A DNA stretch of 64,000 bases from the NCBI GenBank assembly GCA_964199315.1, contig OZ116709.1, forward strand, positions 5,704,001 to 5,768,000. Reading direction: 5' to 3'. This DNA comes from Orbicella franksi. Taxonomy: Eukaryota. Under the pieces are notes generated by a model. It searched no databases, was not told the origin of the DNA, and saw only the letters and a list, made by a program, of their open reading frames with translations. Within the stretch, counting starts at the first letter, position 1; each line of letters opens with the position of its first letter. Below are positions 5,101 to 63,424 of this stretch, piece by piece. The translations under genes were made by a program, and so were the position numbers.

Positions 5101-6130
5101 GCTAAGCTAAAATTTATTTACAGAATGCAATATTGGTTGTACATGGATTGTTTATTAAACCGTGTCTGCAAAATGAAGTTTTTTGATTGTTTTAAATGCA
5201 TCTCATCAGTTTTTTTTTCTTGTTACCTAAGAGTTTATGCTAACGGCTCCTTTCAGTTATGGCTAACGCAGTAACGGAAGATAATTTCGAAACAAAGTGA
5301 AACATGAACATTTACCACCCGCTGAAATTGTCGTCAAAAACTGGAAGGGTGTTTTAGTGGTTTTCTTTTAGTAGAGTAGCTTTATTCTGAGTTTGTGTCC
5401 CTTTAGGATGTTTTTTTATATAAACTGGATCATTGCGTTTGAATTAAAATATAATTCTATTCAAGAGATATGTAGTCGGTAAATAGAGTAATCTTAAAAA
5501 TTTCTAACAACGACTGACATTTATTTTCACCTTACATAACATCAATATAATACTTTGCCAAGTTGAAGAAATCAAGAGTAGAACAGCTAGGAGACATTGT
5601 CTTTATAATGACGTATCAAAAAATTCTTAGAACTAAACTCTAAGGTTAAAAGGTAATAACTAAGGAGAATTAAAATTTCTAGCAAAACGTTCATCATTCA
5701 TGTTTGTTTTCAAAGATCATGAGGCGCCATGTTTTAATTACGTTTTAAAATATACATTAGTTATGCAACACTTTCGAGTGGTATATCTTGGAATATTCCA
5801 TGAGTCACTTGTATTTTCTCGGTACACACACAAGTCTTTATTTTACAACGAGAGAGCATTGCATACATGTAATTAGTATATACCACACAAGTGAATAGTG
5901 CTTTTCGCGCGCTCTAATTGGTTAACTCGGAGGTGATCAGCAAGTACTACTCACCTCCGAGCGGCCGGCGCGAGAGATTGTAAAATTTCCGACCGCTTGT
6001 CACACTTAAAATAACGTTTTGGTCGGCTAATTATTCAGCTTGTGTGGTATATGCTAAAACAATTATTCACCTCAGTGTTGGTGAAAGTGATGGATATTTA
6101 CCTCCACTTCATTGAATAATTGTTAACTAT

Positions 6131-6298: not shown

Positions 6299-6431
6299 AT
6301 GCTCAGCTCTTCGCTGTTAAGAGCGCTATTGTTCTTGCTAGTTACTAGCCATGTGTCTGCCAAGAAAAATAAGACATCCTCCTCAAATCAAGATGTCAAA
6401 AATCAAACTGCGTATAAACGTCAATATATAG
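6299..6431 (+). CDS. First coding exon: signal peptide
   Basis: Acceptor ttacttccag at 6292, ATG at 6299; [28 protein letters not shown]...; donor gtaagt at 6432, phase 1. The acceptor implies a non-coding exon further upstream. Confidence 0.8.
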
Positions 6432-9400: not shown

Positions 9401-12400
9401 TCTCATATCGTAACCGTTCTCGATCTTGTTCTTTTTTGAGTGTTTTTTTTTTTCATCTGTGATGATTTTCACTCTTTATTAAATAATTGGGTTTGTTTTT
9501 TTTTTTAAGATGTCCTTTGATTTTTGTCCTAATTTTCCATCTTATGATATGAGGTTTGTAAGGACTAAGTGAATCGAAAGATGGCGTTTCATAGGTAAAA
9601 GAAAAAAAAAATCAAGAAAAAAAGGAAATTAAATAATAAAAACTATCGTTGCGTAAAAAATCAGTGACAAAATAATAAAATATTGGCAAAGGCTTGGAAA
9701 AAACAAATCATTTTGTTCTTAGTCTTTGCGTCTTCATATCCTGATATTTCGTGACAATCGTTTACTGCACTTCCGTGTTTGGGCAGCGGCTACTTGACCT
9801 GTCACATCTGTCACAGCTGTCACGCTCGTTCTCGCTCGTACTGAATGAACTCAAGCAATCACTGACCGCTTATAGTGCGTTGAATTTCTCGGTTATTTTA
9901 CGGAAAATTGGACGTTTGTTTTAAGTTCTAAGTGGACAGTATCGATCTCTCTAAGCGAGATGAATGGCTTGAGAAATTTCAGAAGAAAGGAAAGGTATTT
10001 AGATTTGTTTATCTCGTCCTGTCTTGATACGAAGTTGTGCACGTGGCGATCGACTTGCCTGCAGTTGCAATGTTCTGCGTGATTTTTTGAGCTGATTTTT
10101 GGGTAATGTTGATACGAAAGTTAAACATCGTTTTGAAGATTATCGTGGTGTAGTAGGAAAAACGGGGTATTGGAAGCAATAATTTTAAAGACTACCTCAG
10201 CCCTTCAGTTTTCATAAAAGTATTTTCACGACTTGCACGTCTGCATGTATATTCTGATGTCGATCGATGGTGTATGGAATTGCCTGGTAAAAGCAGAACA
10301 ATGAGCAAATGAGTTAGGGTAAAGAGAAAAATTGGAATTGATGTATGTAATTATACAGTCCGGTAATCTTTCTTGCAGACAGGCTGAAGTAACGCAATCT
10401 GCAAATGAACAGTGTCATGCTTTGCATACTGATACCCATGAAATGCTAATTTCTTTGTTTATTCTTGATCTAATAATTTTATCGTCGTGTTTTTATGCTT
10501 TACTGTCTCAGTAGATTAACTCTTGATGCCATTATTTTGTATTTTCTTCTAATTATTCAATTGGTTAACATCATTTTGGATGTTGTTTACCAGTTCCCTC
10601 CCTACCCCCTTGTCCAGCCCTTGACCATTAGCAGTAGGCCATTTATGAGTTGCCTTTTGCCTCTGTGTCAAAATGAGTCTTTGAGCAAAACCATTCATAT
10701 CGAAATATGTGCTGCCTGCATGTTCATCGTCTTGCAAATTGAACTCATTTTCATACGAAAGGTTTTGCACATAGACTCACCTTGAAACAGAGGCACAATT
10801 GCCTATTATTTTTTGCCCCCCCAAAAGGGGAAATTCTCTGGGGTGGGGACAAATTAATGGTTCTAACGTACCGGGGCTTAGAACATTCCATGGTTACATT
10901 TTAGTCAGGACGAGAGCATTACATGTCTCCATGTGCTTTTATGTTCCATTGGTCACAACACTGATTGTGTAAAAGTTTCTTTGATAACACTACGATAGTT
11001 GCTCTTGAATTATTATTTTGCGCAGTTTTTACAGTGAACAAATTATGTACTTTTACTGTTACAAAATCTTTAAGTAATAGGCCAGTTCCCAGTTACCTTT
11101 TGCCTCTGTGTCAAAATGAGGCCTCGTGCAAAACTTTTCCCATGAAATTGAGATTGATTTGCATGAAAATGAACATACAGTACAGTTTATTTTTCATAAC
11201 AATGGTTTTGCACAAAAACTCGTTTTGACATAGAGGCAAAGGGCAACTCTTAAATGGCCTAATAAAGAGGATATACTCAATAAAATTGTTGCATGTCACT
11301 GAAAATTTAAGACATATGGTATGACCCTAATCTGTAACAATCTGCCACATTCGAGACTGCCTAATATGCCACATTCGAGACCTGAACACCACAAGGGTGC
11401 CAAATTTTCTGGGCCAGGGTTGTCCCCACGATGAGGGTAGGCAAATAAATGCTTGCCTCTCCCCTGTCCCCTGGCAGTAAAATAAAATTCCAACTGCCCC
11501 ACCCCTGGGAGCAAATGCCTGGCTATGGAATCTCTAACAAACTTTATTTTCTTTTTTCTAGCAACCTTAAAGCCTACAGCTCCGATGAGTAAGTAGGATG
11601 CCATAATAATTGTTATCTTGAAGCCCTAACAAAGAAAACTGATGGTTGGTTATATATCTTAACACTTAAGTTTCATCTTCGGTAACAATAAAACTTGCTG
11701 AATAATAAACTGGGAGCTTCAAACTACGTAACTGCCCAAACGCTGGCATATGGGTATTGGATGGTTGTATCACAGCAGTTACATACAGGGTTTGTCCTTT
11801 AGGCTTATCACACAATTTTCTCTTCCACCTTTTGGTAGGTCAAAGAGAAGGGTGAATTGTATGGCATTAACCAAACAGGAGTCTGTGTTTGGGGCTGCTG
11901 TAGGTCCCCGGTCACCTTGTGAGCCTGGAACGGACTTTAACATCCATTTCTTAGAAAAAAAAACTCACCAAAAAATATCCCACAGCAATGCAACATGCAA
12001 ACTTATAGTTTCTTATCTGAAAGGAAAGTTAAAAGAATTTAGTCAGGGGTTTCAGTTTTGCCCACCTTTGGGTCAACGTTTGGTGAAAGACTAAGCCAGA
12101 TCCTTTTCAAATCGTAATTTTTATTTTGAGCTAGCTAGGAGCTTGTTTTAATAAGTATTTGAGCGAAGGAGTAAAACCGGCAGCACCGTGCAGTGCGACA
12201 TACAGTATAGTTGTGGTCACAGGCTAATTCTGGTCTCTCTGGGACCAAGTGAACCTTTTGCCATATATAGGTGTCTGTATTAAGGAGGGGACCGTGAGGA
12301 GAGGTTTGATTGTTTTTGTTTGTTTCTCAACAGCCTGCCACACAGCCATAGATCTCGCTTTCCTGATCGACGGCTCCGCCAGTGTCGAGCGATATGGCAT

Positions 12401-15400
12401 TGGCAACTTCCGCCGATTGGTCGACTTTGTCCGTGACGTAATGCTCGGTTTTACAGTCTCACGGACAAATACACGGGTTGGAACAATCGTGTTTGGTACC
12501 AAGCCCTATGTGCTCTTTGGCTTCAACAGTTACACGAACAACGGCGCTTTGTTCAACAGGTTCAATAAGGGTGTCCATTATCCGAAATCAGGGAGCCGTA
12601 TTGGCAGGGCCTTGTTGATGGCCCAAAATCAGCTGTTTCGCAGGAACCCCAGACGGTCAAGGACCACCAAAGTTGTCGTAGTTATCACTGACGGTAGCTC
12701 GATGGATGACGTCGCAGCTCCTTCAAATGCCTTAAAGGCCCGTGGTGTGAGGATCTACTGTGTAGGGGTGGGACGGTACATTAATGGTCGTCAGTTAGAT
12801 ATCATGGCTTCCCCACCTCGCAAGAATCACATCTTCACCGCAGATTGGACTCACTTAGGGATTGTGGTGAACGAACTTAGAAACGCAATTTGCTTAGGTA
12901 GGTTTAAAGTGATGTTGTTTTCAAGTGAACATGTCGAACAGCGCAAGCTTCTAGTCAATAATAGAAGCGTTCGGTACCAACAGTGGCCCGACTGTATTAC
13001 GTGCGATTTTTCTGAGTGAATGTTAAAAGCAGCTTTAAACTGGATGTGAGTAAACATGCTTCAGTGAGAATTATCAAAGCTTACCACAGTGTAAAACCAT
13101 TCTTTTCATAACACTTCTTGTTTTGGGTGGTCATTTACATTTTCAGTGAAATTACTGCGCGCGCACGTCGAAATGACGTCATATTGTGAGAATAAAATGC
13201 ATGGCTTAGGAGAGTAGCCTCCGGCTCATTGCTGTTTCCATTGGAACAATTTTTTGTGTAGAATGGCGTGAAACATAAAACTAGTTTGTTTTTCACCAAT
13301 GAGTTTCTATTAAACATAATCCGTATCAATTGTTGCGTCTCACTTGCAGGTACTGGAGGAAATCTTTTACCAGCGAAGCATCGTGTATGTCTTTGTCCAA
13401 TAACTAGACCAACAAGTAAGTATTTAGTTTCCATTAGACGCGTGAGGGAACAGACATGTCTCCCACGCAATTCCTTTACTTGCCAATACCACCTCAGAGA
13501 TTCGTGCCGAAAAATACTGCACTGATATTGCCTTCCCTGCATGAGAAAAGTTCCAGATTCGAACCGAAAAAATTTCATGCCGATAACGCAGGACCCTGTG
13601 GTTGGAACCTCCCATGTGAAAAGGTCGCGGATACTCCTCCGAAAAATCAAATTAAACCCTTAAAAGAGACCAAGCTAGGCGTGGCTCGAGCTTTATTTGA
13701 CCTCTAAACTCTCAAAGATGCCACTTTGAAACGGAAATACATCGGTTTTTGTTGTTTCTTCACGTCCAACCCTAAAAGATACTTTGCCGGCTGAAATAGT
13801 GGCCTTTCGTCCTGAGCTCCCTAAGTGAGACAGAATTCTTGATTTTTACCCCTAAGCGAGACGACGAACATCCCCGAGCTTTTCAGATGGAAGTCCTCCC
13901 CCCGTGTGCAGAACTGCAGACATTCGTGTTATGTTCCAGATTGTTTGTTGTTCGGTTATGAGTTATCGGCGGTACGTAAGCAAAATGTGATCGTAGACAC
14001 TGCTGGGATCTACTATATAAATAGCGCTACTTCGCCAGGGTGACGACCTCGTCTTGGTTGTCTGTCTTACGGGAAATGGAAATGAGAGCGAGCGAAGTGA
14101 CGTTGGTTTCTTAGGCCAGACACGTTTATATACTATTGCGTCGTCGCTCCTTAGAGAAGACTGAAGTAGAATCAAGTTAAATTAATACATATCCCTTTTA
14201 CTTTTAGGACCGACAACGAAACCAACTAAAAGGCCGCGTAAGTAAATTTAATTGTGGTTGGTCTCTTAATCGTCTTTGTGCGTGCCCGTTAATAAGGCCG
14301 TTGTTCTTGGTATACCATACTGTTTTGACGATAATTTAATTGAACATGTCAAAGTTTTACGTTGTCAAGTTCGTTAAGGGATCTACGAAACTTTTGAAGG
14401 ACTAAACACATTTTCAAAAACATCTGAAATTGTTTACTTGTCAAAACGTTTACTCTTTGAAAAGAACTTATCAAACAATGGTACAGCAATCGTATGCAAT
14501 ATTGTACTGTTTAAACAGGATACGTTGGAAGTTATAATGTTGCTTGGTTTTGAGACGTTTGCGATATCTAGAGTTACTTACTTTAAATCTATTTCTCACT
14601 ATCTATGACTTTGGGAAGGAACAAGAATGAGTGATAATCTTTAAGAGAAGAGATTTTGAAGCGATTTTCAAAGTGATTTTCAAAGCGTGCTCTGTCTGCC
14701 TTGTTGTCCTTGTTGGCGTGTGATAACGAAGTCATGATTTTTTTTTTCATAGGCTTCCCTCGTATTGTTGCATTTTACCCGCTCAGCAGGAAAACAAGAG
14801 GCAGAGACATCAGTTCCAGTCAAAACCCCGAGGGAAAGCTTCATAACGTACGACCGGCACCGGGCCCCGACGGGCTCCCTGATGGCTCTTACTACTTCCA
14901 CGGAACAAAGACCAGCTACATAGATTTTCCTAACAACGGCAAGCTCGACTCAAGATACTCACTGACCCTCCTTGCCTGGGTTTATCCAGAGGGTTCCGGA
15001 CCGATCTTTCACTTCGCCCCCGGTGGAGTTCGCTTCTGGGTCGTTAGGCCCAATACTCTGTTTGTGCGTTTTGTTCGCCGCACAGGGAGACCAACCCGAC
15101 AGCTGATTAGTCGCACGTTGATCCCAAAGCAGTGGAACTACGTTGGAGCATCTTATGACGAGAAGACAGGAATTGCAACCCTGTGGCGCAATTCGCAACC
15201 TGTCAAGTCAGTGTTTATCGGTCGCATTCGCCTCGCTACCAACCGACCGGTCAGGATGGGTGCCTTACCACGTGACTTGCGGTACTACCGTGGTAGGATC
15301 TCTTGCATGCAGGTGTATAGCGTACCTCTGTCTGGACCAGAGATAAAGAGGGCTAAAAGGGTCTGCTTCCGAGGACGTAAGTGATATTTTCAATCTAAGA

Positions 15401-23306: not shown

Positions 23307-23354
<48 letters not shown>

Positions 23355-56800: not shown

Positions 56801-59800
56801 CTATCAAGAGATTACGTTATACGCGAGGGTCAAGAAAAACTGGAAAAGCCTTGCGGCTTGTAGTTGGAGAGCTGTTTAGACGCAGCCGAAAAAAGCGGGT
56901 GTTGATAGTGGTAACAAATGGTCAATCCTACGACAGCGTTAAAATACCAAGCTTTCAGATACACCAAGCCGGAATTGAAGCCTTTGCAGTTGGTGTTGGA
57001 ACTCGAGTTAGGAACAGCGAGCTGAGTACAATAGCCACAGACTCTCGCCACATATACATGGTGAACTTCAAGACGCTTAATGGCATCGTCAAGAGCATTG
57101 TCAGGAAAGCTTGCAGAGGTATTTAACACTACCTGACTGTTTATTGTTGCCACATTTTTTATTAACACAGTATATCCCTTGCGGAACAGGAAATTACGAC
57201 TTGTACTGCAGGGGAGCCAGCAAAATATACTATTCGACAGTTTCTGAAAATTACCTTTTAATTTAACGAGTCTATTCATCGTTTTCGGAGTTTTGAATTT
57301 CTAAAGACAGGGGTGGAGCTTCTTTTTTTTATTTTGGTTTCTCGCAGGACTAAGAGTAGTAGTACTTAATAGTTTTGCTCGCTGTAATTCGTCAGGGATA
57401 TAAGCTAATTGCAAACTGGCATCTTTCTTTCAGCACAAATTACGACACGGCCAACAGTTCGACCAACCAAGCCGTCTCCAACCAGAAAACCAAGTAAGTT
57501 TGTTATGGAAATACTGTAATCATGTAGTTATGTTGTTCGAGAACAGTAGACAATTGTTTGCAGTTTTCTTAAGTTTCTGGCCGTTAGCGCAGTTTCCGCG
57601 GTGGCCTCATGGTTAGAGCGCTCCGGATCACTGAAGCGGTCACTGCTAAGTGCTCAAGGGGACGCTGCCTTGTGTTCTTGGGTAGGACACCTAACTCTCC
57701 CAGTGCCTCTCTCCAGGTGTATAGATGGGTACCGGCGAATTTAATGTTGTGGTTACCTTGCGATGGACTAGCATACGATCTATGGGGGAGTAGAAATACT
57801 CCTAGTCGGTCATGCTACAGAAACCGGGATAAACTCCAGTCTGATGGGTCACTTGGCTCGTATGCAGACTTTAACTTTTACCGCTATTTATTGTGAACTT
57901 AGTCTTTTTGTTTTTTGTTTTTTTTCTGTCAGGTTTTCCTACGCCCATCGCCATCTACACACTCGATCGCAAGACTCGCGCACGCGACATAAGCCCAGCG
58001 AAAAACCTTCCAGGTCGAAGCTACAACATCCGGTACGCTCCTGGTCCTTATGGACAGCCTGGCGAATCAACAGAATTCTTTGGTCGCCGTAACAGCTACA
58101 TCCGGTTTCCAAATAACGGCAGACTGGACGCTAAGGACTCTATAACTCTTCTAGCCTGGATTCTACCGTTTGGTCGCGGTCCAATCTTCGAGTACTTTCG
58201 GGGAGTAAGGTTTTGGGTTGTGCGCTCGGACACGTTATACGTTCACTTCATCCGCCGGAACGGGCGGCGCACGAGGGTGTTGATGAAACGACGCCTCAGA
58301 CCACGCCGTTGGAATTACGTCGGTGCCACGTACGACAAACGAACTGGTATGGCTACCCTGTGGCTGGATTCAAGGCCGATATTGTCGCAGAATATCAAAC
58401 GAATTCAATTGGCGACCAAAAAGACTGCTTACATGGGTGGAACATTCCGAGGTCGCATCGCTTGTATGCAGGTTTATTCTGACCCTCTGACTGGACCTCA
58501 GATTAAGAAGGTCAAGAACCTTTGTAATAAACCAGGTAAGTCATATAAGTCTTGAAGTGGAATCCGTAAAATTCTCATGTAGGCTTGTAGCATGCGGTTG
58601 CAATAGATAAATTTCCAGCGAATAATATTTGTTTTTGCATGCGGATTATTACTTAAGGGATTAGACGAGTGACTCTTATGGGGTAAATATTTTCTTCTCT
58701 CACCCACTCTCCCCAGCCCCCATAGGCGAAGCCCCAGCTTACCCTCCAAGAAAGTAATTTATCTAAAACCTTTCGTTCTTCTACATTGATTTCAAACTTG
58801 ATAAAGGGATTCTACTATTTTGTTCCCGGACTTCAGAAGAGATTACGCTCTCACTCTGTCAAGCAGTAAATATATACATCAGTTGCAATACTTTTTTTAA
58901 TCTTTTTTTTTATGGTTTTTCTGAATTTTAAATCTACTGATCCTATTTAAATTACTTACAGGTCCTTACACGCCAACAACACCATCTCCTGGTAAGTGTT
59001 TGATTTGTATATATTTCAATTTGTGTTAATTACTGTAATGTTCTATAAATCATTCAATTTGTCACGGTTAAGGTGTGTCTGAATAGTGCGAAAGGATCAT
59101 TTTTTTCTCTCTTTCTGTTCCCTAGCATTGCCTCCAGCTCTGGCTTTCTATCCCTTAAACGTGCGTTACAACACCCGTGACGTCAGCAGGAGCAAAAACC
59201 CGTCAGGGCGCATGGCAAATGTGCGACCTGGCCTGGGTCCAGACGGAAGGCCTGGTGGCTCCTTTAGGTTCAAGGGTCGTGCAGACAGTTACATACAGTT
59301 CCTGAATAAAGGTCGTCTGGACGCCCGGAATTCCATCTCTATCTTGGCTTGGATAAATCCGGATGGACCAGTTGGTCCAATCTTCAATTACAAGCCTGAC
59401 GGGTTTGGCGTGCACTTGTGGATGGTCCGTCGGCGAGTGTTGCTGGTACGTTTCGTGACGCGTACACGAAAGTTTACAAAGCCAGTGCAAACGAACCTCA
59501 TTAAACCAAAGGCTTGGAATTTCGTCACCGCTACCTATGATCAACGTTCGGGAATTGCCCGATTGTACATCGATTACAGGGAAGTTGCGTGGACGAGAAT
59601 CGGCCGGATACGACTGGCTACGAACTATCCAGCAAGAATGGGAGCCCGTATTGGAGACAAGCGTTATTTCCGTGGACGAATAACTTGCCTGCAGATTTAC
59701 GACGTCCCACTTCGACCGATACAAATCAAAGCCGCCAAGAGACTCTGCTTGAAGACAAGTAAGCAAAGCAATTCTTAATTAAATTTGCATTCGTATTACA

Positions 59801-62800
59801 CAAGCATCTCAGAAAGATTTGAGGTGTGTTCCAAGAAACCTTTTTTCCTTTCTTTACTTGTTATCAGTTGATGAATCGATTCAAGAGTGATTCGTATTGA
59901 ATAATTGATCGATAGCTTGATAGATCGAATTGATTGATTTGTTTGTTTGTTGTTTATTAATGCTTTCATTGCTTGGTCCATTACTGATCGATCGATTGAT
60001 TTTTTTTTTTTGGCAAAATTTCTGCATCTAACTTAAGCTACATAGTCGTTAAAAGTTTTTACGTTATCACTATCGTGCTTTTCATTCTTTAAACAGAGGT
60101 TATAACCAAACCAACAACGCGACCGACACCTACCAAGCCCACCCCACCAAGGCGTAAGTAACCAATCAGCAATGCTCTTTCTCCATTTTTCCCGTCTCTC
60201 TATAGGCGACCAGAGGAGAAAGGAAGAAGTCGCCTTTACTAAAAATGAAGTCACCTTTACCAATTAGTGGAAAATCTGATTTTTCGTTTTCCGTGTTTTC
60301 TTTTTTCTTTTATCCCGATTCCTTCACCTCAGTTTATCCCTTAATTGACATACTTTTAGATATGTATATTCACGAATCTTAAAAGTGTGCGGTTTTAGTT
60401 AACGGTAATAAAAAAACTCCTCTGCTTTCATGCGAAAAAAGCAAAACATAAAATTTGAAAATTGGTTTGCTTTATGATGACATTTTAATTTGAGTTCTCA
60501 ATGTTTGATTATTAAAACATTCTCGTCATAGCAATCTTCTCAAGTTCAAAATGCGCTTTGCTTGAATTTATTGTTCTCTATATTTTCTTTCTGTAGCTTG
60601 CCGAGCGAATATGGATCTTGGATTCCTTATCGACAGCTCCTACAACTTGCGACGAGTAGGGCGCGGAGCTTTCAGACTTCTTACACGTTACATTGCAAGA
60701 CTTCTTTACACGCTTCGCATTTCCACTCAAGAGACCCGAGTCGGCATGGTTACGTACGCGTCAAGACCCAGGCCCCTGTTCCGCTTTAACCGGTTTTTCA
60801 GGGCGTCTTCCATGTTGTCGGCCATACGAAGAATTCGCCTTCAAAGGGGTCCTCTTAGGATAGGAAAAGCTCTGTACTACGCTCGTAGGTACCTGTTCAG
60901 AAGAAGGCGTCAATGTGGACGCAAGCGCGTTCTCGTGGTGTTTGCAAGTGCACGCTCAGTAGACAGAGTGCAAAGAGTGGGACGCGTTTTAAGGCGCATG
61001 GGAATTGAAGTGTTCGTTGTTGGCTTTGGTAGACGATTTAGCAAGGCGCAGTTATTCAAAATCGCTACAAATGGGCTGCACGTGTTCACGGCGACGCCGA
61101 GGACGTTGGCTGCAGTTCTGGGCGCCATACGAGCTAAAGCGTGTTCAGGTATCTTATGGGTTAAATTTGTGATCAATAATTCACAGTCATGTTCACACAC
61201 ACTATCCTGCTTAAGAATAGTCTTTAACCCACTTAATCGAACAGTGACAGTTTACAAGTTGATATCATTAATAACAATCTCAACGGTTCTATTTGCAACA
61301 GTTAAAAAAGCAATTACGTTTAACGGTTATAATCAGCCCTGGATCACTTTACAGATCAGCCGCCTTTTAAGCCATCGGAATATAATTCAAGTAACAACGC
61401 GTTAAATTTGATGTTTGGTTTAAATTGGCCCTCAGCCTCTTCTTAACTTACCATTGATTCATTTAAAGATCTTTGTGACCTCCTTACCTTGCTTACCACA
61501 AGCGATTCAATCGTTGTCGTTTTTATTCTGTTTAGTAACCGGATCAGCAGCCGCCAGAGCTATATTCCCATTTAACGGTGTGACAAGAGGACGAGATATA
61601 AGCATCAACCGCAACACTGCTGCAAGACTTGTCAACGTCAAGCCTGCACCAGGCCCAGACGGCCTTCCTCTTGGATCGTACTATCTCCAGGGCATCGCAA
61701 ACAGCTACATATACTTTCCCAACAAGGGCTGCCTAGATACAAAGAATTCCCTCACCATAGTGGTTTGGGTCTACCCTGAGGGCAGCGGACCGATCTTCCA
61801 CTTCTTCCCTCGCGGCTGGGGGGTACATCTTTGGATGAAGAATCCGCGCACCCTACTGGTGAAGTTCGTGCCTAGGTCCTTGCAGACCATCAGCGTTGTT
61901 ACAAGCCGGCGAATCAAACCGAAGGCCTGGAACTACATAGCGGCAACCTACGATTACGTCACTGGTTTGGCCACTCTGTGGAATGATGCCATACCTATAT
62001 CTCAGAGGAATATTGGAAAGATCCAACTGGCGACTAACTACCCAGCTATATCAGGGAAAAAGCCAAGAGATCGAAAGATTTTCCGTGGCCGGATAGCATG
62101 TCTTCAGATTTACGATCGAGCATTGAATGGGAGACAACTCGGAGCTCTGAAAAAGAAGTGTTTCAGAGGTTTGTTTTCAGAATTATCGTTAAAAGAAGTT
62201 TTCAATTTAATATCGATATCGCGCTATTGATATTGATCTTTTGAAATTTTCTTTGTTCTTCGTCAGCTCGACCCACGCCTACTCGTCCACCACCAGGTAA
62301 GACCAACTTTTCTATCTCACTTACCATATTCAATGAAAACTCTTGAGATTTGAAAGTTCGGTAAAAATGTAAATGGTAAGACAATTTTGGCTCGACCGAC
62401 CGGAAAATCTTCGAAATAAAAGGAACGTCTTGAAAGGTAGTCAAAAATTTCCAACTGAAATATCCGAGTGGAAAATGTACTTACCATTTGCAATTATTCG
62501 CCGCCCTCTTGGAATTATGATCAGGTTTAACTCGTCAGTAGTCTATCTCGGTAAATTAGGGGGTTTGGGGTAGATGGTAAGTGGCCAATCCGAATGAAAG
62601 TCACCATCAGGCATTTTTGCTTACCATTTGCACAACCGTTGACGAACCGCTTTCTTCATGTAAATGGCAAACAACCGGCATCTCTTTAGATTTTGACATC
62701 CATATTTTCAGCCTCCTTCGTCAGTGTTGACGGCATGTCCGTATTATTTTATCACCTTCTCATACATCTTTTCTCCTTTCAGCTCTTCCACTTCTAGTCG

Positions 62801-63424
62801 CTGTTTATCCACTGGACAGAATTAATGGCGGCCGTGACATCAGCCCACGAAAATGCCCGACCGCAAGGCGAGTTGGCGTGAGAATCGCCCCAGGTCCAGA
62901 CGGACGAAAATACGGATCCACCCAATTCTATGGCAACCGCAACAGCTACGTCGAAATCCCGAACAACGGCAAACTTGACACCGTGGCCTCCATTTCCATT
63001 CTGACCTGGGTTTATCACGAGGGCATCAAAGGTCCTATCGTCAACTACAGACCAGGTCCCGGATGGGGCGTTCACTTGTGGATGGTTGGACCACGCACGT
63101 TATTTGCACGGTTCGTCCGCAGGGATGGAGTGTTTACCAAAGCAGTGGTCGTCACGAGCAGAAAGATACGGTACAGAGCCTGGAATTACATCGGTGCTAC
63201 ATACGACTACAAGAGTGGTGTTGCCAAACTATGGGTGAACTCGAGGTTGCTTGTGGTGAAGAGTATTGGACGATTCCGATTGGCTACGAACTATCCAATC
63301 AGAATTGGTGCGCGTCGTGGTGACAAACGGTACTTCAAGGGAAGGATTTTCTGTGTGCAAATCTACAGTCGTGCGCTAAACCGGAAACAAATTTTGGCGG
63401 CTAGTAAAACGTGCTTCAGGCCGT
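6299..63424 (+). CDS. Giant secreted Arg-rich multi-VWA / LamG-like repeat protein, at least 7,017 aa, 66 coding exons, 3' end beyond window
   Basis: Hand-spliced chain of GT-AG exons with compatible phases and no in-frame stop: signal peptide, WSC-like domain, 13 VWA, 18 LamG-like, 27 microexons. The join across the 3-kb intron 9332-12333 is inferred from phase compatibility and the lack of another start/signal peptide. Confidence 0.85.
6936..7013 (+). CDS. Exon: short Cys-containing segment
   Basis: ttttccgcag|...|gtgcgt, 78 nt, phase 1-1; [26 protein letters not shown]. Confidence 0.7.
7444..7707 (+). CDS. Exon: Pro/Gln-rich low-complexity segment
   Basis: ttttcacag|...|gtacgt, 264 nt, phase 1-1; [17 protein letters not shown]...YHIRGK. 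Confidence 0.7.
7736..8071. mobile_element. Tc1/mariner(pogo)-type MITE
   Basis: Left TA|cagtcgaacttccactaac; right end reverse-complements to cagtggaacctctccacaac; same terminal motif as the 30716-33454 element. Confidence 0.55.
8141..8383 (+). CDS. Exon: WSC-like domain (main part)
   Basis: tctcattcag|...|gtgata, 243 nt; FKSLGCWKD...MKCAEAA...[12 protein letters not shown]...YTCK fits the WSC Cys pattern. Confidence 0.8.
8505..8544 (+). CDS. Exon: end of WSC-like domain
   Basis: ttctttag|...|gtaagt, 40 nt, phase 1 to 2; [13 protein letters not shown] matches the WSC C-terminal GG.W...VY motif. Confidence 0.8.
8784..9331 (+). CDS. Exon: Thr/Pro-rich then acidic spacer ending RPPRPR...CPVC
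   Basis: tgatag| phase 2 matches the preceding exon; donor gtaagt at 9332; lies in ORF 8734..9462. Confidence 0.75.
10633..10807. mobile_element. MITE family B copy
   Basis: taggcc...ttgcctctgtgtcaaaatgag shared with 11076-11263; ends gcctatt. Confidence 0.6.
11076..11263. mobile_element. MITE family B copy
   Basis: aataggcc...ttgcctctgtgtcaaaatgag and inverted ctcgttttgacatagaggcaa...ggcctaat. Confidence 0.65.
12334..12897 (+). CDS. VWA domain V1 (MIDAS near-intact)
   Basis: cag|...|gtaggt, 564 nt, phase 1-1; [16 protein letters not shown]...VITDG...AICL. Confidence 0.92.
13350..13415 (+). CDS. Linker microexon m1 (CLC motif)
   Basis: ttgcag|66 nt|gtaagt; [22 protein letters not shown]. 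Confidence 0.75.
14208..14237 (+). CDS. Linker microexon m2
   Basis: cttttag|30 nt|gtaagt; [10 protein letters not shown]. Confidence 0.8.
14753..15376 (+). CDS. LamG/ConA-like domain L1
   Basis: catag|624 nt|gtaagt; GPDG...SYIDFPNNG...WNYVGASYD...CMQVY...CF. Confidence 0.9.
15634..15663 (+). CDS. Linker microexon m3
   Basis: tgtag|30 nt|gtaagt; [10 protein letters not shown]. Confidence 0.8.
16045..16674 (+). CDS. LamG/ConA-like domain L2
   Basis: ttag|630 nt|gtagct; LPDAVAFYP...KKLCFK. Confidence 0.9.
16820..16873 (+). CDS. Linker microexon m4
   Basis: catcag|54 nt|gtaagt; [18 protein letters not shown]. Confidence 0.8.
17424..17990 (+). CDS. VWA domain V2 (MIDAS degenerate)
   Basis: ttccag|567 nt|gtaagt; [16 protein letters not shown]...VVMGSRS...KIC. 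Confidence 0.9.
18403..18444 (+). CDS. Linker microexon m5
   Basis: ttacag|42 nt|gtaaga; [14 protein letters not shown]. Confidence 0.8.
   Translation, partial: HLLHMLHLSQHKS
18914..19540 (+). CDS. LamG/ConA-like domain L3
   Basis: caacag|627 nt|gtaagt; [10 protein letters not shown]...RFCFRA. Confidence 0.9.
19832..19858 (+). CDS. Linker microexon m6
   Basis: ttttag|27 nt|gtaagg; RPVTPKPTP. Confidence 0.8.
20014..20187. mobile_element. MITE family B copy (diverged)
   Basis: aatagcccatttccgagttgcct...gaggtaattcggaattggcctgtt; similar layout to 10633 and 11076. Confidence 0.55.
20465..21103 (+). CDS. LamG/ConA-like domain L4
   Basis: tatag|639 nt|gtaaga; LPRIVAIYP...[10 protein letters not shown]...RCFK. 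Confidence 0.9.
21462..21491 (+). CDS. Linker microexon m7
   Basis: cgttag|30 nt|gtatgg; [10 protein letters not shown]. Confidence 0.8.
21805..22371 (+). CDS. VWA domain V3 (MIDAS intact)
   Basis: tctcag|567 nt|gttggt; DGSGS...GRTYIG...LTDG. Confidence 0.9.
22972..23001 (+). CDS. Linker microexon m8
   Basis: ttttag|30 nt|gtaagt; [10 protein letters not shown]. Confidence 0.8.
23683..24318 (+). CDS. LamG/ConA-like domain L5
   Basis: ttgcag|636 nt|gtttgc; [12 protein letters not shown]...RCFLP. Confidence 0.9.
24722..24856. mobile_element. Degenerate MITE flanked by CTG
   Basis: Internal inverted motifs atccac..gtaaatctctatccag / ggatagtgatttatccagtggat; CTG at 24719-21 and 24857-59. Confidence 0.5.
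24860..25071. mobile_element. PIF/Harbinger-type MITE with CTG target duplication
   Basis: TIR gggcccgtttct(a/c)gaaagccccggaaac, one mismatch in about 28 bp; CTG on both sides. Confidence 0.75.
25169..25219 (+). CDS. Linker microexon m9
   Basis: ttgcag|51 nt|gtaagg; [17 protein letters not shown]. Confidence 0.8.
25542..26084 (+). CDS. VWA domain V4 (MIDAS degenerate, extra Cys)
   Basis: gtttag|543 nt|gttagc; [16 protein letters not shown]...PRCGRRRVL...LTTGES. Confidence 0.88.
26228..26899 (+). CDS. LamG/ConA-like domain L6 (GCLDT type)
   Basis: gtatag|672 nt|gtacgt; [12 protein letters not shown]...QCFRT. Confidence 0.9.
27655..27699 (+). CDS. Linker microexon m10
   Basis: tttcag|45 nt|gtttgt; [15 protein letters not shown]. 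Confidence 0.8.
27873..28117. mobile_element. Foldback MITE with long inverted arms
   Basis: attttacagttg...agcgaggctggaggtgaccttgctttgataca mirrored by tgtatcaaaacaaggtcacctc...agcctcgct...caactgtaaaat. Confidence 0.7.
28186..28755 (+). CDS. VWA domain V5 (MIDAS intact)
   Basis: ctttag|570 nt|gtaagg; DGSSS...GGTYIG...LTDG. Confidence 0.9.
29164..29181 (+). CDS. Linker microexon m11 (18 nt, smallest)
   Basis: tttttcag|18 nt|gtaagt; IPTTPR. Confidence 0.75.
29400..30035 (+). CDS. LamG/ConA-like domain L7
   Basis: attcag|636 nt|gtaagt; [11 protein letters not shown]...KCFLP. Confidence 0.9.
30464..30520 (+). CDS. Linker microexon m12
   Basis: ttcaag|57 nt|gtaagt; [19 protein letters not shown]. 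Confidence 0.8.
30716..33454. mobile_element. Tc1/mariner(pogo)-type non-autonomous element with nested insertion
   Basis: TA|caagtggaaccttgatttaacgaa ... ttcgttaaatcgaggttccactg|TA; many subterminal cgatataacgaa repeats. Confidence 0.75.
31147..33122 (-). mobile_element. Decayed PIF/Harbinger-like element nested in the previous element
   Basis: Perfect 25-bp inverted repeat aaaggtatgggtcgcacttgggaaa; frameshifted minus-strand remnant 31390-31699 ([14 protein letters not shown] / [28 protein letters not shown]) resembles a Harbinger transposase N-terminus. Confidence 0.6.
33664..34212 (+). CDS. VWA domain V6 (MIDAS degenerate, extra Cys)
   Basis: caccag|549 nt|gtaagt; DGSRR...PTCGRRRVL...VTTGVS. 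Confidence 0.9.
34814..35482 (+). CDS. LamG/ConA-like domain L8 (GCLDT type)
   Basis: ttctag|669 nt|gtatgt; [12 protein letters not shown]...KCFRP. Confidence 0.9.
35597..35626 (+). CDS. Linker microexon m13
   Basis: ttttag|30 nt|gtacct; [10 protein letters not shown]. Confidence 0.8.
35908..36139 (+). CDS. VWA domain V7, first half
   Basis: cgttag|232 nt|gtttgt, phase 1 to 2; [16 protein letters not shown]...AINRIR. Confidence 0.85.
36245..36517. mobile_element. MITE family C inside the V7 intron
   Basis: tagaggggttttcatttgagtgt...acacttaattgaaaaccgctata; homologous to 49702-49976 in opposite orientation. Confidence 0.7.
36894..37222 (+). CDS. VWA domain V7, second half (MIDAS intact)
   Basis: ttccag|329 nt|gtaagt, phase 2 to 1; [11 protein letters not shown]...ITDG...KVCRPTPT. 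Confidence 0.85.
37722..37742 (+). CDS. Linker microexon m14
   Basis: ttacag|21 nt|gtaagt; PTVPTPT. Confidence 0.75.
38156..38785 (+). CDS. LamG/ConA-like domain L9
   Basis: acgcag|630 nt|gtaagc; PPRAVALYP...VCFR. Confidence 0.9.
39625..39654 (+). CDS. Linker microexon m15
   Basis: ttctag|30 nt|gtaagt; [10 protein letters not shown]. Confidence 0.8.
39763..40398 (+). CDS. LamG/ConA-like domain L10
   Basis: ttttag|636 nt|gtaagt; [10 protein letters not shown]...RCFKK. Confidence 0.9.
40547..40573 (+). CDS. Linker microexon m16
   Basis: ttccag|27 nt|gtgagt; LPVTKPTIP. Confidence 0.78.
40889..40918 (+). CDS. Linker microexon m17
   Basis: tttcag|30 nt|gtaagc; [10 protein letters not shown]. 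Confidence 0.78.
41046..41609 (+). CDS. VWA domain V8 (MIDAS intact)
   Basis: atctag|564 nt|gtgagt; [14 protein letters not shown]...GGTKIG...LTDG. Confidence 0.88.
41906..41938 (+). CDS. Linker microexon m18
   Basis: tttcag|33 nt|gtaaca; [11 protein letters not shown]. Confidence 0.78.
42075..43228. mobile_element. TA-flanked non-autonomous DNA transposon (Tc1/mariner-like)
   Basis: TIR c(c/t)ttattggtactaattttcgcg at both ends, TA on each side, subterminal ttcgcg repeats. Confidence 0.75.
43602..44243 (+). CDS. LamG/ConA-like domain L11
   Basis: ttgcag|642 nt|gtatga; [11 protein letters not shown]...RCFLK. Confidence 0.9.
45237..45290 (+). CDS. Linker microexon m19
   Basis: ttttag|54 nt|gtaagt; [18 protein letters not shown]. 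Confidence 0.85.
45593..46135 (+). CDS. VWA domain V9 (MIDAS degenerate, extra Cys)
   Basis: ctatag|543 nt|gtaagc; DATSS...PQCGRRRVL...AAGRS. Confidence 0.9.
46544..47179 (+). CDS. LamG/ConA-like domain L12 (GCLDT type)
   Basis: tcttag|636 nt|gtttgt; [11 protein letters not shown]...QCFRQ. Confidence 0.9.
47283..47327 (+). CDS. Linker microexon m20
   Basis: gtcaag|45 nt|gtaagc; [15 protein letters not shown]. Confidence 0.8.
47468..47761 (+). mobile_element. tRNA-derived SINE family B with (TTA)/(TAA) tail
   Basis: Pol III A-box-like tggccgggtggtt and B-box ggttcaaatcc, then a non-tRNA body (gccaactggtcagcctccaaccagttgggattcttaa) and simple-repeat tail; absent from the duplicated intron. 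Confidence 0.75.
47732..47816. repeat. (TTA)n/(TAA)n microsatellite with an orientation switch
   Basis: ttattattattat, then aataataataataataa, then about 18 att units. Confidence 0.95.
47817..48720 (-). mobile_element. 5'-truncated non-LTR retrotransposon with restriction-like endonuclease (R4/Dong-like), frameshifted
   Basis: [18 protein letters not shown] (CX2CX8HX4C), RPDIVIKDH...[13 protein letters not shown], terminal [13 protein letters not shown]; 1-nt frameshift near 48175; no RT domain retained. Confidence 0.85.
49017..49658 (+). CDS. LamG/ConA-like domain L13 (duplicate of L11)
   Basis: ttgtag|642 nt|gtatga. Confidence 0.9.
49702..49976. mobile_element. MITE family C, inserted after the duplication
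   Basis: tagagcgattttcaattgagt...ctcaaataaaaaccgctcta; absent at the homologous site near 44290. Confidence 0.8.
50120..50173 (+). CDS. Linker microexon m21
   Basis: tcttag|54 nt|gtaagt; [18 protein letters not shown]. Confidence 0.85.
50478..51020 (+). CDS. VWA domain V10 (duplicate of V9)
   Basis: ctacag|543 nt|gtaagc. Confidence 0.9.
51426..52061 (+). CDS. LamG/ConA-like domain L14 (duplicate of L12)
   Basis: tcttag|636 nt|gtttgt. Confidence 0.9.
52151..52204 (+). CDS. Linker microexon m22
   Basis: ttctag|54 nt|gtaagt; [18 protein letters not shown]. Confidence 0.8.
52484..52773 (+). mobile_element. Full-length tRNA-derived SINE family A with 16-bp TSD
   Basis: A box tggcctcatggtt and B box ggttcgagccc; TSD tttattataacagctc at 52468-52483 and 52774-52789. 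Confidence 0.9.
52979..53270 (+). CDS. VWA domain V11, first half
   Basis: atacag|292 nt|gtgtgc, phase 1 to 2; [14 protein letters not shown]...[14 protein letters not shown]. Confidence 0.87.
53312..53763. mobile_element. TTAA-flanked MITE (Kolobok-like GG termini)
   Basis: TTAA|ggtcattcc ... ggaatgacc|TTAA. Confidence 0.65.
53952..54846. mobile_element. TTAA-flanked non-autonomous element (Kolobok-like)
   Basis: TTAA|ggacggtgcctact ... agtaggcaccgccc|TTAA (13/14 match). Confidence 0.7.
55302..55573 (+). CDS. VWA domain V11, second half (MIDAS intact)
   Basis: ctccag|272 nt|gtaagt, phase 2 to 1; [21 protein letters not shown]...KACLPFVP. Missed by the ORF track in the coding frame. Confidence 0.87.
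55996..56019 (+). CDS. Linker microexon m23
   Basis: ttccag|24 nt|gtaagc; PTKRPTPP. Confidence 0.78.
56260..56425. repeat. Perfect 78-bp tandem duplication with 10-bp spacer
   Basis: attctcctgtactttc...tatattgccat at 56260-56337 and 56348-56425. Confidence 0.9.
56585..57118 (+). CDS. VWA domain V12 (MIDAS degenerate)
   Basis: attcag|534 nt|gtattt; DASGR...VTNGQS...KACR. Confidence 0.9.
57434..57493 (+). CDS. Linker microexon m24
   Basis: tttcag|60 nt|gtaagt; [20 protein letters not shown]. Confidence 0.8.
57596..57882 (+). mobile_element. Diverged SINE family A copy
   Basis: Collinear with 52484-52773 (gtggcctcatggttag...gggtaccggcgaa...cgatggactagcat...acttggctcgtatgcagacttt). Confidence 0.85.
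57933..58535 (+). CDS. LamG/ConA-like domain L15
   Basis: tgtcag|603 nt|gtaagt; FPTPIAIY...NLCNKP. Confidence 0.9.
58962..58991 (+). CDS. Linker microexon m25
   Basis: ttacag|30 nt|gtaagt; [10 protein letters not shown]. Confidence 0.8.
59126..59758 (+). CDS. LamG/ConA-like domain L16
   Basis: ccctag|633 nt|gtaagc; [10 protein letters not shown]...RLCLKT. Confidence 0.9.
60097..60153 (+). CDS. Linker microexon m26
   Basis: aaacag|57 nt|gtaagt; [19 protein letters not shown]. Confidence 0.8.
60597..61148 (+). CDS. VWA domain V13 (MIDAS degenerate, extra Cys)
   Basis: ctgtag|552 nt|gtatct; DSSYN...RQCGRKRVL...ASARS. Confidence 0.9.
61536..62168 (+). CDS. LamG/ConA-like domain L17 (GCLDT type)
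   Basis: gtttag|633 nt|gtttgt; [12 protein letters not shown]...KCFR. Confidence 0.9.
62267..62296 (+). CDS. Linker microexon m27
   Basis: cgtcag|30 nt|gtaaga; [10 protein letters not shown]. Confidence 0.8.
62783..63424 (+). CDS. LamG/ConA-like domain L18 (last exon in window; gene continues)
   Basis: tttcag|642 nt|gtaagt; [10 protein letters not shown]...[10 protein letters not shown]...TCFRP. Confidence 0.9.

What the first reader, a model, noticed from the sequence alone, without database searches (positions are those of the whole stretch)
12334..63424. Arginine-saturated versions of normally ordinary domains
Hand counts: L11 has 38 Arg + 9 Lys versus 13 Asp/Glu in 214 aa; V9 has 35 Arg + 5 Lys versus 7 Asp/Glu in 181 aa. 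Runs such as [18 protein letters not shown] and [11 protein letters not shown] recur while the core motifs are kept. This occurs across diverged repeats of two unrelated folds, which implies selection for a polycationic, guanidinium-rich surface. Inference: binding or coacervation with polyanions (sulfated glycans, acidic mucins or skeletal proteins, cnidocyst poly-gamma-glutamate, microbial surfaces), as in marine wet adhesives.
Basis: partly seen in the sequence, partly recalled or inferred. Interest (0 to 1): 0.8.

Follow-up and report, generated by a model that had tools for sequence, protein, structure and literature searches.

The report
Arginine-saturated giant coral matrix protein
A stony-coral gene encodes a huge secreted chain of ordinary adhesion domains (VWA and LamG-like) whose surfaces are packed with arginine. 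Each domain carries about +30 charge, and selection has held that charge constant between coral species, which points to an undescribed polycation that binds negatively charged material.

Summary
The + strand of window 12,334-63,424 holds 18 Laminin_G_3 and 13 VWA domains, one per phase-1 exon. Each has 9-20% Arg, 2-6% Asp+Glu, net charge +15 to +41 and pI 11-12. The array runs about 48 kb past the window: at least 32 LamG, about 25 VWA, an Arg-rich WSC-like exon and (Arg-Pro)n linkers.

- Paralogous domains in the same genome have median 4.7% Arg, against 14-16% in the array.
- Only Arg (x3), Glu (x0.25), Asp and Gln change. Gly/Ala/Pro and the AT-codon residues do not, and flanking non-coding GC is 0.40.

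Arg sits at columns that are polar in paralogues and avoids core columns. Both folds are still predicted with pLDDT 94-97. The exons are under purifying selection (dN/dS 0.07-0.38). Orthologous domains in another coral keep the same net charge although 15-30% of Arg positions differ. RNA runs from several studies hold the exons but apparently not the introns.

Selection for a polycationic surface is therefore supported. The target (mucus glycans, acidic skeletal proteins, microbes) is untested. The wet-adhesive analogy is weak. The Arg runs are no more frequent than composition predicts, and about half of the window's VWA domains have lost MIDAS.

The parts
6299..6431 (+). Candidate first exon: ATG, signal-peptide-like [21 protein letters not shown], strong phase-1 donor
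   Evidence: link to the array inferred from phase compatibility only
8141..8383 (+). WSC domain exon of ordinary composition, phase 1-1
   Evidence: Pfam PF01822 30.8 bits, above the 27.8 cut-off; splice sites
8795..9331 (+). Pro/Thr-rich then acidic exon (the only acidic part), phase 1-1
   Evidence: no Pfam match
12334..12899 (+). VWA 1 (R 10.6%, net +15), MIDAS intact
14753..15376 (+). LamG_3 (R26 K9 DE11 of 207)
16044..16676 (+). LamG_3 (R27 K10 DE12 of 211)
   Evidence: HMM envelope
17424..17990 (+). VWA, MIDAS degenerate (R31 of 188)
18913..19539 (+). LamG_3 (R26 of 209)
20465..21103 (+). LamG_3 (R23 of 212)
21805..22371 (+). VWA, MIDAS intact; holds [10 protein letters not shown]
23683..24318 (+). 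LamG_3 (R34 of 211, net +33)
25171..25239 (+). Candidate Pro-rich linker exon ([18 protein letters not shown])
   Evidence: not confirmed by RNA
25542..26084 (+). VWA, MIDAS degenerate (R31 of 180)
26228..26899 (+). LamG_3 (R29 of 223)
28186..28755 (+). VWA, MIDAS intact (R24 of 189)
29400..30035 (+). LamG_3 (R34 of 211); query of the homologue searches
30466..30534 (+). Candidate Pro-rich linker exon ([20 protein letters not shown])
33664..34212 (+). VWA, MIDAS degenerate (R32 of 182)
34814..35482 (+). LamG_3 (R29, DE4 of 222)
35908..36158 (+). VWA N-terminal half (split domain)
36865..37215 (+). VWA C-terminal half (split domain)
38156..38787 (+). LamG_3 (R32 of 210); ortholog L061:43-708, dN/dS 0.15
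39763..40398 (+). LamG_3; ortholog L061:2588-3310, dN/dS 0.07
41046..41599 (+). VWA, MIDAS intact; ortholog in L061, dN/dS 0.10
43602..44243 (+). LamG_3 'L11' (R38 K9 D7 E6 of 213, pI 11.6); folded, pLDDT 97
45593..46135 (+). VWA 'V9' (R35 K5 D5 E2 of 180, pI 12.0), MIDAS lost; folded, pLDDT 94
46544..47179 (+). LamG_3 (R24 K13 of 211)
49017..49658 (+). LamG_3, recent duplicate of 43602-44243 (dN/dS 0.13)
50478..51020 (+). VWA, recent duplicate of 45593-46135 (dN/dS 0.22)
51426..52060 (+). LamG_3, recent duplicate of 46544-47179 (dN/dS 0.38)
52156..52221 (+). Candidate Pro-rich linker exon
52979..53283 (+). VWA N-terminal half (split domain)
55282..55563 (+). VWA C-terminal half (split domain)
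56585..57118 (+). VWA, MIDAS degenerate (R25 K10 of 177)
57932..58534 (+). LamG_3 (R28 of 201)
59126..59758 (+). LamG_3 (R29 K12 of 210)
60096..60158 (+). Candidate Pro-rich linker exon
60597..61148 (+). VWA, MIDAS lost (R37 of 183, net +37); holds [11 protein letters not shown]
61544..62170 (+). LamG_3, least Arg-rich of the array (R18 K14 of 209, net +24)
62783..63424 (+). LamG_3 (R27 K13 of 213); the array continues beyond the window

Best explanation
This is one very large (or a few tandem) transcribed stony-coral gene for a secreted beads-on-a-string protein. Its probable layout is a signal peptide, a normal WSC domain and a short Pro/Thr-rich acidic segment, followed by at least 57 VWA, Laminin_G_3 and WSC-like domains joined by Pro-rich linkers, some of them (Arg-Pro)n. 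In an ancestor of this gene lineage the exposed, formerly polar or acidic positions of each domain type were replaced by arginine. Selection has since held the charge at about +30 per domain, on the order of +1,500 for the chain, while individual Arg positions drift. SHOWN: the composition, its specificity to this lineage, its independence from GC, its location at surface-type columns, retention of both folds, purifying selection, conservation of charge between species, and presence of the exons in RNA runs. INFERRED: the protein acts as a polyvalent polycation that binds and cross-links polyanionic extracellular material such as sulfated mucus or matrix glycans, acid-rich skeletal proteins or microbial envelopes. 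Guanidinium would be preferred over Lys because its bidentate pairing with sulfate, carboxylate and phosphate survives seawater ionic strength; this last point rests on general physical chemistry, not on a test here. Which polyanion is the target is not known.
For: Domain identity and exact counts. Array versus same-genome paralogues: R 13.9 vs 4.7% (LamG) and 15.8 vs 4.7% (VWA), net charge +31/+28 vs +3/-3. Only charge-related residues shift: R x3.1-3.2, E x0.23-0.27, D x0.41-0.72, Q x0.6-0.7. G+A+P is 22.1 vs 22.9% and 17.5 vs 17.4%, and FYMINK is unchanged. Non-coding GC is 0.40, which gives an expected R of 7.3%; all six Arg codons are used. Array Arg falls at columns where paralogues have K/R/E/Q/N/H and is 2-10x depleted at I/L/V/F/Y/W/M/C columns. 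In the models, L11 loops are 25% R and strands 9.5%, and V9 helices are 25% R. AlphaFold pLDDT is 97 and 94. dN/dS is 0.13-0.38 between in-window duplicates whose introns are only 68-75% alike, and 0.07-0.23 against orthologous exons of another coral at dS about 1. Net charge per orthologous domain is 32/33, 27/24, 25/25, 37/34, 33/33, 33/28 and 14/12 despite 289 differing columns; 87 of these involve Arg and 34 are K<->R. All cationic LamG domains form one clade (SH-aLRT 94) nested among neutral paralogues. In this genome the clade is confined to two C12 loci. A third fold (WSC-like, 20% R) and (RP)n linkers are also cationic. Fourteen RNA runs from at least 7 studies hold 46-71% of the words of one exon but only 20-38% of an exon+intron stretch that is 48% exon, as expected if introns are absent. 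Extracellular hallmarks are a signal-peptide-like first exon, phase-1 exons throughout and conserved flanking Cys pairs.
Against: No binding, localisation or cell-type data exist, so the functional step is inference. GC at four-fold sites of non-Arg codons is somewhat higher in array exons (0.48/0.51 vs 0.39/0.46), so a small mutational contribution to the choice of Arg over Lys cannot be excluded. The sister gene on C12 reaches a similar charge with more Lys, so guanidinium as such may not be essential. The background sample (21 LamG, 25 VWA) is the best-scoring subset of a much larger family, and several paralogue clusters could not be fetched.
Confidence: 0.6

Rival explanations
1. Host-defence polycation. 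The chain works like eosinophil cationic protein or major basic protein written large: Arg-coated folded domains in mucus or epithelium that agglutinate and permeabilise microbes, with the acidic N-terminal segment acting as a partial neutralising pro-piece. This is a specific version of polyanion binding, not a denial of it.
For: The same evolutionary recipe is documented for RNase3/ECP: an ordinary fold that acquired abundant surface Arg, reached pI >10, and binds LPS and agglutinates bacteria (PMC5964141, read). The (Arg-Pro)n linkers downstream resemble Pro/Arg-rich antimicrobial peptides (the resemblance is from my own knowledge). An acidic exon precedes the cationic body. The gene is transcribed in adult colonies.
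Against: dN/dS of 0.07-0.23 with one-to-one domain orthology is conservative, unlike the rapid evolution typical of antimicrobial effectors. The acidic exon (net about -20) is tiny beside a charge of about +1,500. No induction or activity data exist.
Confidence: 0.2
2. Skeletal or adhesive counter-polyelectrolyte. The protein is the missing cationic partner of coral acid-rich proteins or sulfated matrix glycans and forms complex coacervates at the calcifying or attachment interface.
For: Extreme, conserved positive charge on a polyvalent chain. The VWA profile's nearest solved relatives are collagen VI and the mussel byssal proximal thread matrix protein 1, which are structural matrix VWA domains. 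Oppositely charged protein pairs are an established principle of marine cements (review PMC11277488, listed, not read in detail).
Against: The paper searches run here, and the one skeletal-proteome paper read (PMC4890752), turned up no such protein, although an in-silico tryptic digest gives about 9 detectable peptides per domain. The domains are folded, not disordered, with no clear Tyr/DOPA signature (x0.96 LamG, x1.35 VWA). No cell-type data exist.
Confidence: 0.15
3. The composition is a by-product of mutation bias, of repeat inheritance without selection on charge, or of a decaying pseudo-exon array, and has no functional meaning.
For: Slightly raised synonymous GC in the array exons. A single origin of the cationic LamG clade followed by duplication. 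Arg positions are no better conserved than other residues among repeats (0.46 vs 0.49).
Against: GC-rich-codon residues G/A/P are unchanged and Glu falls fourfold, which GC bias does not predict. Introns are 40% GC. About 60 exons are intact with conserved splice sites. dN/dS is 0.07-0.38. Per-domain charge is equal between species despite Arg turnover. The enrichment arose separately in VWA, LamG, WSC-like and linker sequences. RNA evidence supports transcription.
Confidence: 0.04
4. Polyprotein precursor. Furin-type convertases cut at the many RX[K/R]R sites and release single cationic domains or peptides, so the giant chain is only a delivery form.
For: 18 RX[KR]R motifs in 21 domains. Basic clusters lie next to the last Cys of many LamG domains.
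Against: The motif count equals the shuffled expectation of 17.8+-4.0. Many sites lie inside secondary-structure elements or the disulfide-closed domain, for example just before VWA strand beta-4. The linkers in the window carry no conserved dibasic site.
Confidence: 0.06

Closest known systems
Collagen VI / matrilin-type extracellular VWA domains; mussel proximal thread matrix protein 1
   Same: Best solved sequence relatives of the VWA profile: collagen VI alpha-3 E 5e-302 over 10 domains, and PTMP1 E 3e-81. They share the Cys at both domain ends, one domain per phase-1 exon and the beads-on-a-string design.
   Different: Same-genome VWA paralogues of this matrix type are near neutral (net -14 to +17). 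Here each domain is 11-20% Arg and net +15 to +37, and about half of the window's copies have lost MIDAS. There is no collagen helix, and the VWA domains alternate with LamG_3.
Laminin_G_3 / pentraxin-like jelly-roll domains of amphioxus, hemichordate, Hydra and Nematostella 'uncharacterized' mosaic proteins
   Same: The same LamG subfamily, 33-46% identical over the whole domain, and sometimes in one chain with VWA or WSC. The fold is a ConA-like jelly roll.
   Different: Those proteins have 3-6% Arg and 9-12% Asp+Glu. No predicted protein longer than about 335 aa in either protein library carries an Arg-rich domain of this clade.
[quoted passage not shown]
   Same: An ordinary folded extracellular domain that became coated with surface Arg after duplication and reached pI >10, and that binds anionic microbial or glycan surfaces (PMC5964141). 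That major basic protein has a C-type-lectin fold and an acidic pro-piece is from my own knowledge.
   Different: Those are single small domains that evolve fast. This is a conserved chain of about 60 domains of other folds. No activity is known.
Polycationic marine adhesive proteins (sandcastle-worm cement, mussel foot proteins)
   Same: Secreted, strongly basic, and thought to pair with polyanions (review PMC11277488).
   Different: Those are short, low-complexity, Lys/Gly/Tyr(DOPA)-rich chains. Here the domains are folded, the cation is Arg, and Tyr is at most mildly raised (x0.96 LamG, x1.35 VWA).

Membership tests
VWA (Pfam PF00092) | Profile match above the curated cut-off (23.8 bits) | tested here: met
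   89-126 bits for six window domains; 18 array places over the cut-off
VWA (Pfam PF00092) | Alpha/beta Rossmann-like fold with a central sheet | tested here: met
   AlphaFold model of V9: pLDDT 94.3, pTM 0.92, six strands alternating with helices
VWA (Pfam PF00092) | MIDAS metal site DxSxS...T...D | tested here: inconclusive
   Intact in 21807, 28186, 41046, 12334 and most downstream copies. Degenerate in 17424, 25542, 33664, 45593, 50478, 56585 and 60597, for example T->R and TDG->AAG
Laminin_G_3 (Pfam PF13385, ConA-like lectin/glucanase clan) | Profile match above the curated cut-off (27.6 bits) | tested here: met
   37-73 bits; 27 array places over the cut-off
Laminin_G_3 (Pfam PF13385, ConA-like lectin/glucanase clan) | Beta-sandwich jelly-roll fold | tested here: met
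   Model of L11: pLDDT 97.0, all-beta. Foldseek TM 0.7-0.78 to lectin-like jelly-roll domains at about 11% identity, a match at fold level only
Pentraxin (Pfam PF00354) | Profile match above the cut-off (25 bits) | tested here: not met
   18.6 bits, E 0.0016, on one domain only. PDB profile hits to pentraxins are E 2e-7 to 5e-6, so these are remote relatives, not members
WSC (Pfam PF01822) | Profile match above the cut-off (27.8 bits) | tested here: inconclusive
   The N-terminal exon 8116-8418 scores 30.8 bits (met). The Arg-rich downstream exon L064:8336-8722 scores 21.6 bits, E 2.5e-4 (below the cut-off)
Marine wet-adhesive polycations | Low-complexity or disordered chain rich in Lys/Gly/Tyr (DOPA), made in adhesive glands | tested here: not met
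   Folded domains; Tyr x0.96 (LamG) and x1.35 (VWA), Lys x0.8-0.9 against paralogues. Gland expression is not testable here
Arg-coated host-defence proteins (ECP/MBP type) | Folded domain with Arg gained at exposed positions, pI >10 | tested here: met
   pI 10.9-12.0; Arg at polar columns, loops and helices
Arg-coated host-defence proteins (ECP/MBP type) | Antimicrobial or cytotoxic activity; storage with a neutralising acidic partner | not testable with these tools
   Only a small acidic exon at 8795-9331

The most novel reading that the evidence does not exclude
Corals make a conserved, supercharged (about +1,500) chain of folded domains that serves as the cationic half of an extracellular polyelectrolyte pair. 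Its partner would be acid-rich skeletal proteins, sulfated mucus glycans or microbial surfaces, with which it would form condensates or gels that still hold at seawater salinity. No protein of this kind, a polycation built from Arg-saturated globular modules rather than from disordered repeats, turned up in the papers I searched.
Probability: 0.3. Interest if true: 0.8.

Novelty: new variant of a known kind. Interest (0 to 1): 0.6.

Why it matters
Coral extracellular chemistry is described almost entirely in terms of polyanions: acid-rich skeletal proteins, sulfated mucus and glycosaminoglycans. A conserved, transcribed, giant polycation would be an obvious missing partner. It makes concrete experiments possible, such as heparin or poly-Glu binding and coacervation at 0.5 M salt, bacterial agglutination, and localisation to calicoblasts, mucocytes or cnidocytes. 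It is also a clean natural case of selection acting on the net surface charge of several unrelated folds at once while their cores are kept, which is useful for protein-supercharging and polyelectrolyte-material design. Finally, the gene appears to be absent as a multi-exon model from the protein libraries searched, so it is probably missed or fragmented in coral gene catalogues.

Tried and rejected
Those places were not sent to any search tool afterwards.
As a result C12:5778-5788, 5798-5808 and 5694-5704 kb and several paralogue clusters were read only through 3.5-kb loci or not at all.
- I looked for spliced products among the database ORFs. All are unspliced single-exon calls that run into introns, and one (P0033) looks chimeric.
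- I searched for long annotated coral models. The exhaustive representative search and a long-protein search seeded with an amphioxus relative both found none.
- The idea that the Arg runs or furin-like sites are a selected motif is rejected: the counts equal the shuffled expectation.
- The idea that trypsin would shred the protein and hide it from proteomics is rejected: about 9 peptides of 7-30 aa per domain.
- GC bias is rejected as the cause.
- Long antisense ORFs over LamG exons are a by-product of codon content, since Pfam matches lie on the + strand only.
- The ESM Atlas feature search returned only generic VWA clusters.
- Paper searches for arginine-rich, polycationic or Laminin_G_3 coral proteins, and a word search (von Willebrand, laminin G, pentraxin, VWA, mucus) of the main text of the Stylophora cell-atlas paper, found nothing relevant.
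- The Foldseek similarity of the LamG model to the lectin-like subdomain of clostridial neurotoxin binding domains is a generic jelly-roll match at about 11% identity and has no functional meaning here.
Full report
WHAT IS THERE. The window is eukaryotic DNA of about 42% GC. Runs that hold it are stony corals or 'coral metagenomes'. It is G000:C12:5,704,001-5,768,000 of a 497-Mb assembly. From 12.3 kb to the window end the + strand carries long stop-free stretches. Pfam assigns them alternately to VWA (PF00092, E 1e-25 to 1e-36) and Laminin_G_3 (PF13385, E 1e-9 to 1e-20).

Each domain is one exon with a polypyrimidine tract and AG in front and a consensus GT donor behind, always in phase 1. 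HMMs built from the window's own domains find 18 LamG_3 and 13 VWA in the window, two of the VWA split by an intron.

The array continues to about C12:5,815,700. In total it has 32 LamG_3 places and about 25 VWA. It also has an Arg-rich WSC-like exon (Pfam E 2.5e-4, below the cut-off) and short Pro-rich linker exons. Downstream these linkers become (Arg-Pro)n, for example RPRPRPSPRPTRPR.

Upstream lie three more exons: a signal-peptide-like exon (ATG at 6299 with a strong phase-1 donor), a normal WSC exon (30.8 bits) and a Pro/Thr-rich acidic exon. All are phase-compatible with the first VWA. That these belong to the same gene is inferred, not shown.

THE OBSERVATION. V9 (45593-46135) has R35 K5 D5 E2 in 180 aa. 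L11 (43602-44243) has R38 K9 D7 E6 in 213 aa. Every cleanly bounded domain has pI 10.9-12.0 and net charge +23 to +37. The 29 complete domains in the window sum to +812 over 5,820 aa.

The quoted Arg runs exist and use mixed codons. However, runs and RX[KR]R motifs are exactly as frequent as in shuffled domains. They follow from composition and are not a separate motif.

IS IT UNUSUAL, AND IS IT GC? I scanned the whole genome with both Pfam models and translated 60 fetched loci.
- LamG paralogues of the same subfamily (same SYIEFPNxGxLDT core) have median R 4.7%, range 0.5-6.8%, and net -9 to +8. Array domains have 13.9%, range 8.6-19.4%, and net +22 to +41 (p 1e-9).
- VWA paralogues have R 4.7% and net -14 to +17. 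Array VWA have 15.8% and net +15 to +37 (p 6e-9).
- Residue by residue, only Arg (x3.1-3.2), Glu (x0.23-0.27), Asp (x0.41-0.72) and Gln (x0.6-0.7) move. Gly+Ala+Pro (22.1 vs 22.9%; 17.5 vs 17.4%) and the AT-codon residues do not.
- Non-coding DNA of the locus is 40% GC, which would give 7.3% Arg from random codons. All six Arg codons are used.
- Synonymous GC of non-Arg codons is 5-10 points higher than in paralogous exons. That is too little to triple Arg, and it cannot explain the loss of Glu.

One limit remains: the background is the best-scoring subset of the family, and several paralogue clusters could not be fetched. A search with L11 itself shows that all close relatives in this genome lie at two C12 loci.

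WHERE THE ARGININES SIT. In joint alignments, array Arg occupies columns where neutral paralogues have K, R, E, Q, N, H, D, S or T. It is 2-10-fold depleted at I/L/V/F/Y/W/M/C columns. AlphaFold models built on these alignments are confident: LamG pLDDT 97.0 and VWA 94.3. In L11, loops are 25% Arg and strands 9.5%. In V9, the amphipathic helices are 25% Arg. I had no coordinates, so exposure is inferred from these two proxies.

The fold and the flanking cysteines are kept. About half of the window's VWA domains, the most Arg-rich ones, have lost MIDAS residues, in places to Arg.

SELECTION.
- Recent in-window duplicates (43.6-47.2 kb and 49.0-52.1 kb) give dN/dS 0.13, 0.22 and 0.38, while their introns are only 68-75% alike.
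- A 5.4-Mb contig of another coral (L061) carries one-to-one orthologues of window domains in the same order. At dS 0.8-1.3, dN/dS is 0.07-0.23.
- Arg numbers match between the species (32/32, 25/26, 19/22, 34/38, 34/35, 24/26), although only 70-85% of Arg positions are shared.
- Net charge per domain is 32/33, 27/24, 25/25, 37/34, 33/33, 33/28 and 14/12. Of 289 differing columns, 87 involve Arg and 34 are K<->R.
- Among repeats within the gene (median identity 48% for LamG and 40% for VWA), Arg is conserved no better than other residues. It is spread over about 90 columns per fold, and only 3-5 columns are nearly invariant Arg. Even so, nearly every repeat stays above 10% (one window LamG is at 8.6%).

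This is the signature of constraint on charge rather than on particular residues.

ORIGIN. In a maximum-likelihood tree, all cationic LamG domains form one clade (SH-aLRT 94). This clade contains the array, a second gene at C12:2.69-2.71 Mb and two other-coral contigs. It is sister to two mildly basic C12 domains and is nested among neutral coral paralogues, with Nematostella, Hydra, hemichordate and amphioxus domains outside.

The cationic state of LamG thus arose once and was multiplied by duplication. The independent events are one each for LamG, VWA, the WSC-like domain and the linkers. The outgroup proteins are annotated only as 'uncharacterized' and have 3-6% Arg; some already combine this LamG type with VWA or WSC.

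EXPRESSION. Fourteen RNA runs from at least seven studies, some poly-A selected, hold 46-71% of the sampled words of exon 43602-44243. The same runs hold only 20-38% of 43500-47300, which is 48% exon. That is the ratio expected if introns are missing from the RNA contigs. Contigs cannot prove splicing.

WHAT IS KNOWN. By sequence, the closest solved relatives of the VWA are collagen VI and mussel proximal thread matrix protein 1. For LamG they are pentraxins, pappalysin LamG-like modules and an S-layer domain. Foldseek gives only generic jelly-roll matches.

No predicted protein longer than about 335 aa in the 1.84-billion-representative library or in the word-indexed library carries an Arg-rich domain of this clade. 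All 76 close hits are unnamed single-exon ORFs on coral or metagenome contigs, and nearly all are themselves Arg-rich (73 of 76 at 9% Arg or more). Full-text searches found no description.

The nearest conceptual precedent is eosinophil cationic protein, an ordinary fold that acquired abundant surface Arg and binds and agglutinates bacteria (PMC5964141).

INTERPRETATION. Shown: a real, conserved, transcribed gene whose folded extracellular modules have been recoated with arginine and are held at about +30 each.

Inferred: it works as a polyvalent polycation that binds or cross-links extracellular polyanions. The target is open. Mucus or matrix sulfated glycans, acid-rich skeletal proteins and microbial surfaces are all compatible. 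Conservative evolution and the matrix-type VWA lean towards a structural partner. The (RP)n linkers and the ECP precedent lean towards defence.

Mutation bias, pseudogene decay and a convertase-processed polyprotein are unlikely.

VERDICT. This is a new variant of a known kind, a VWA/LamG modular matrix protein with a conserved, extreme, fold-independent arginine supercharge. It is of moderate to high interest because it offers a testable cationic counterpart to the polyanion-centred picture of coral extracellular chemistry.

Noticed in passing
G000:C12:2,692,000-2,707,000 (+); loci L066, L028: A second cationic VWA/LamG gene with 8 LamG_3 domains of net +23 to +29. It reaches this charge with about 10% Arg plus about 8% Lys. 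Its domains interleave with array subtypes in the tree, so it looks like a block duplicate of the array.
   Followed up: partly
G000:C5:9,714,000-9,775,000 (-): About 60 near-identical VWA exons spaced exactly 998 bp apart (E 7e-31 each). This is a very young tandem exon array inside a larger VWA gene region, with ordinary charge.
   Followed up: no
L063:5944-6048, L063:8632-8733, L064:3208-3282, L064:4861-4983, L064:9353-9451 (array downstream of the window): Linker exons made of (Arg-Pro)n, for example RPRPRPGPRPRPKPLPRPKPRPRPKP. They resemble proline/arginine-rich antimicrobial peptides. The linkers inside the window are Pro/Thr-rich instead.
   Followed up: partly
window 47997-48314 (+ frame), in the intron between the duplicated blocks: A 55-aa stretch 98% identical to L061:7641-8069 of another coral, where it lies next to an RVT_1/HTH_animal retroelement ORF. 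It is probably a retroelement fragment, and it is far better conserved than the host gene's exons.
   Followed up: no
window 59203-59766 (-), 56830-57279 (-); L063:6492-7019 (-); L065:2312-2803 (-): Long antisense open frames (150-190 aa) lie over LamG/VWA exons. This is expected when the sense strand is rich in Arg codons and poor in TTA/CTA/TCA. No Pfam support.
   Followed up: partly
window 650-901 (+): The C-terminal half of a VWA domain (HMM positions 107-181; R8 K9 DE8 of 84) lies upstream of the candidate signal-peptide exon. It probably belongs to a neighbouring gene.
   Followed up: no
window 8795-9331 (+): A Pro/Thr-rich (mucin-like) then strongly acidic exon (the open stretch that holds it, 8731-9459, has 36 Asp+Glu in 243 aa) stands just before the polycationic body. 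It may be an O-glycosylated or neutralising N-terminal segment.
   Followed up: partly
protein P0033: A database ORF that joins the N-terminal half of the 57.9-kb LamG exon to the C-terminal half of the 29.4-kb LamG exon. It is most likely an assembly chimera in a short-read contig.
   Followed up: no
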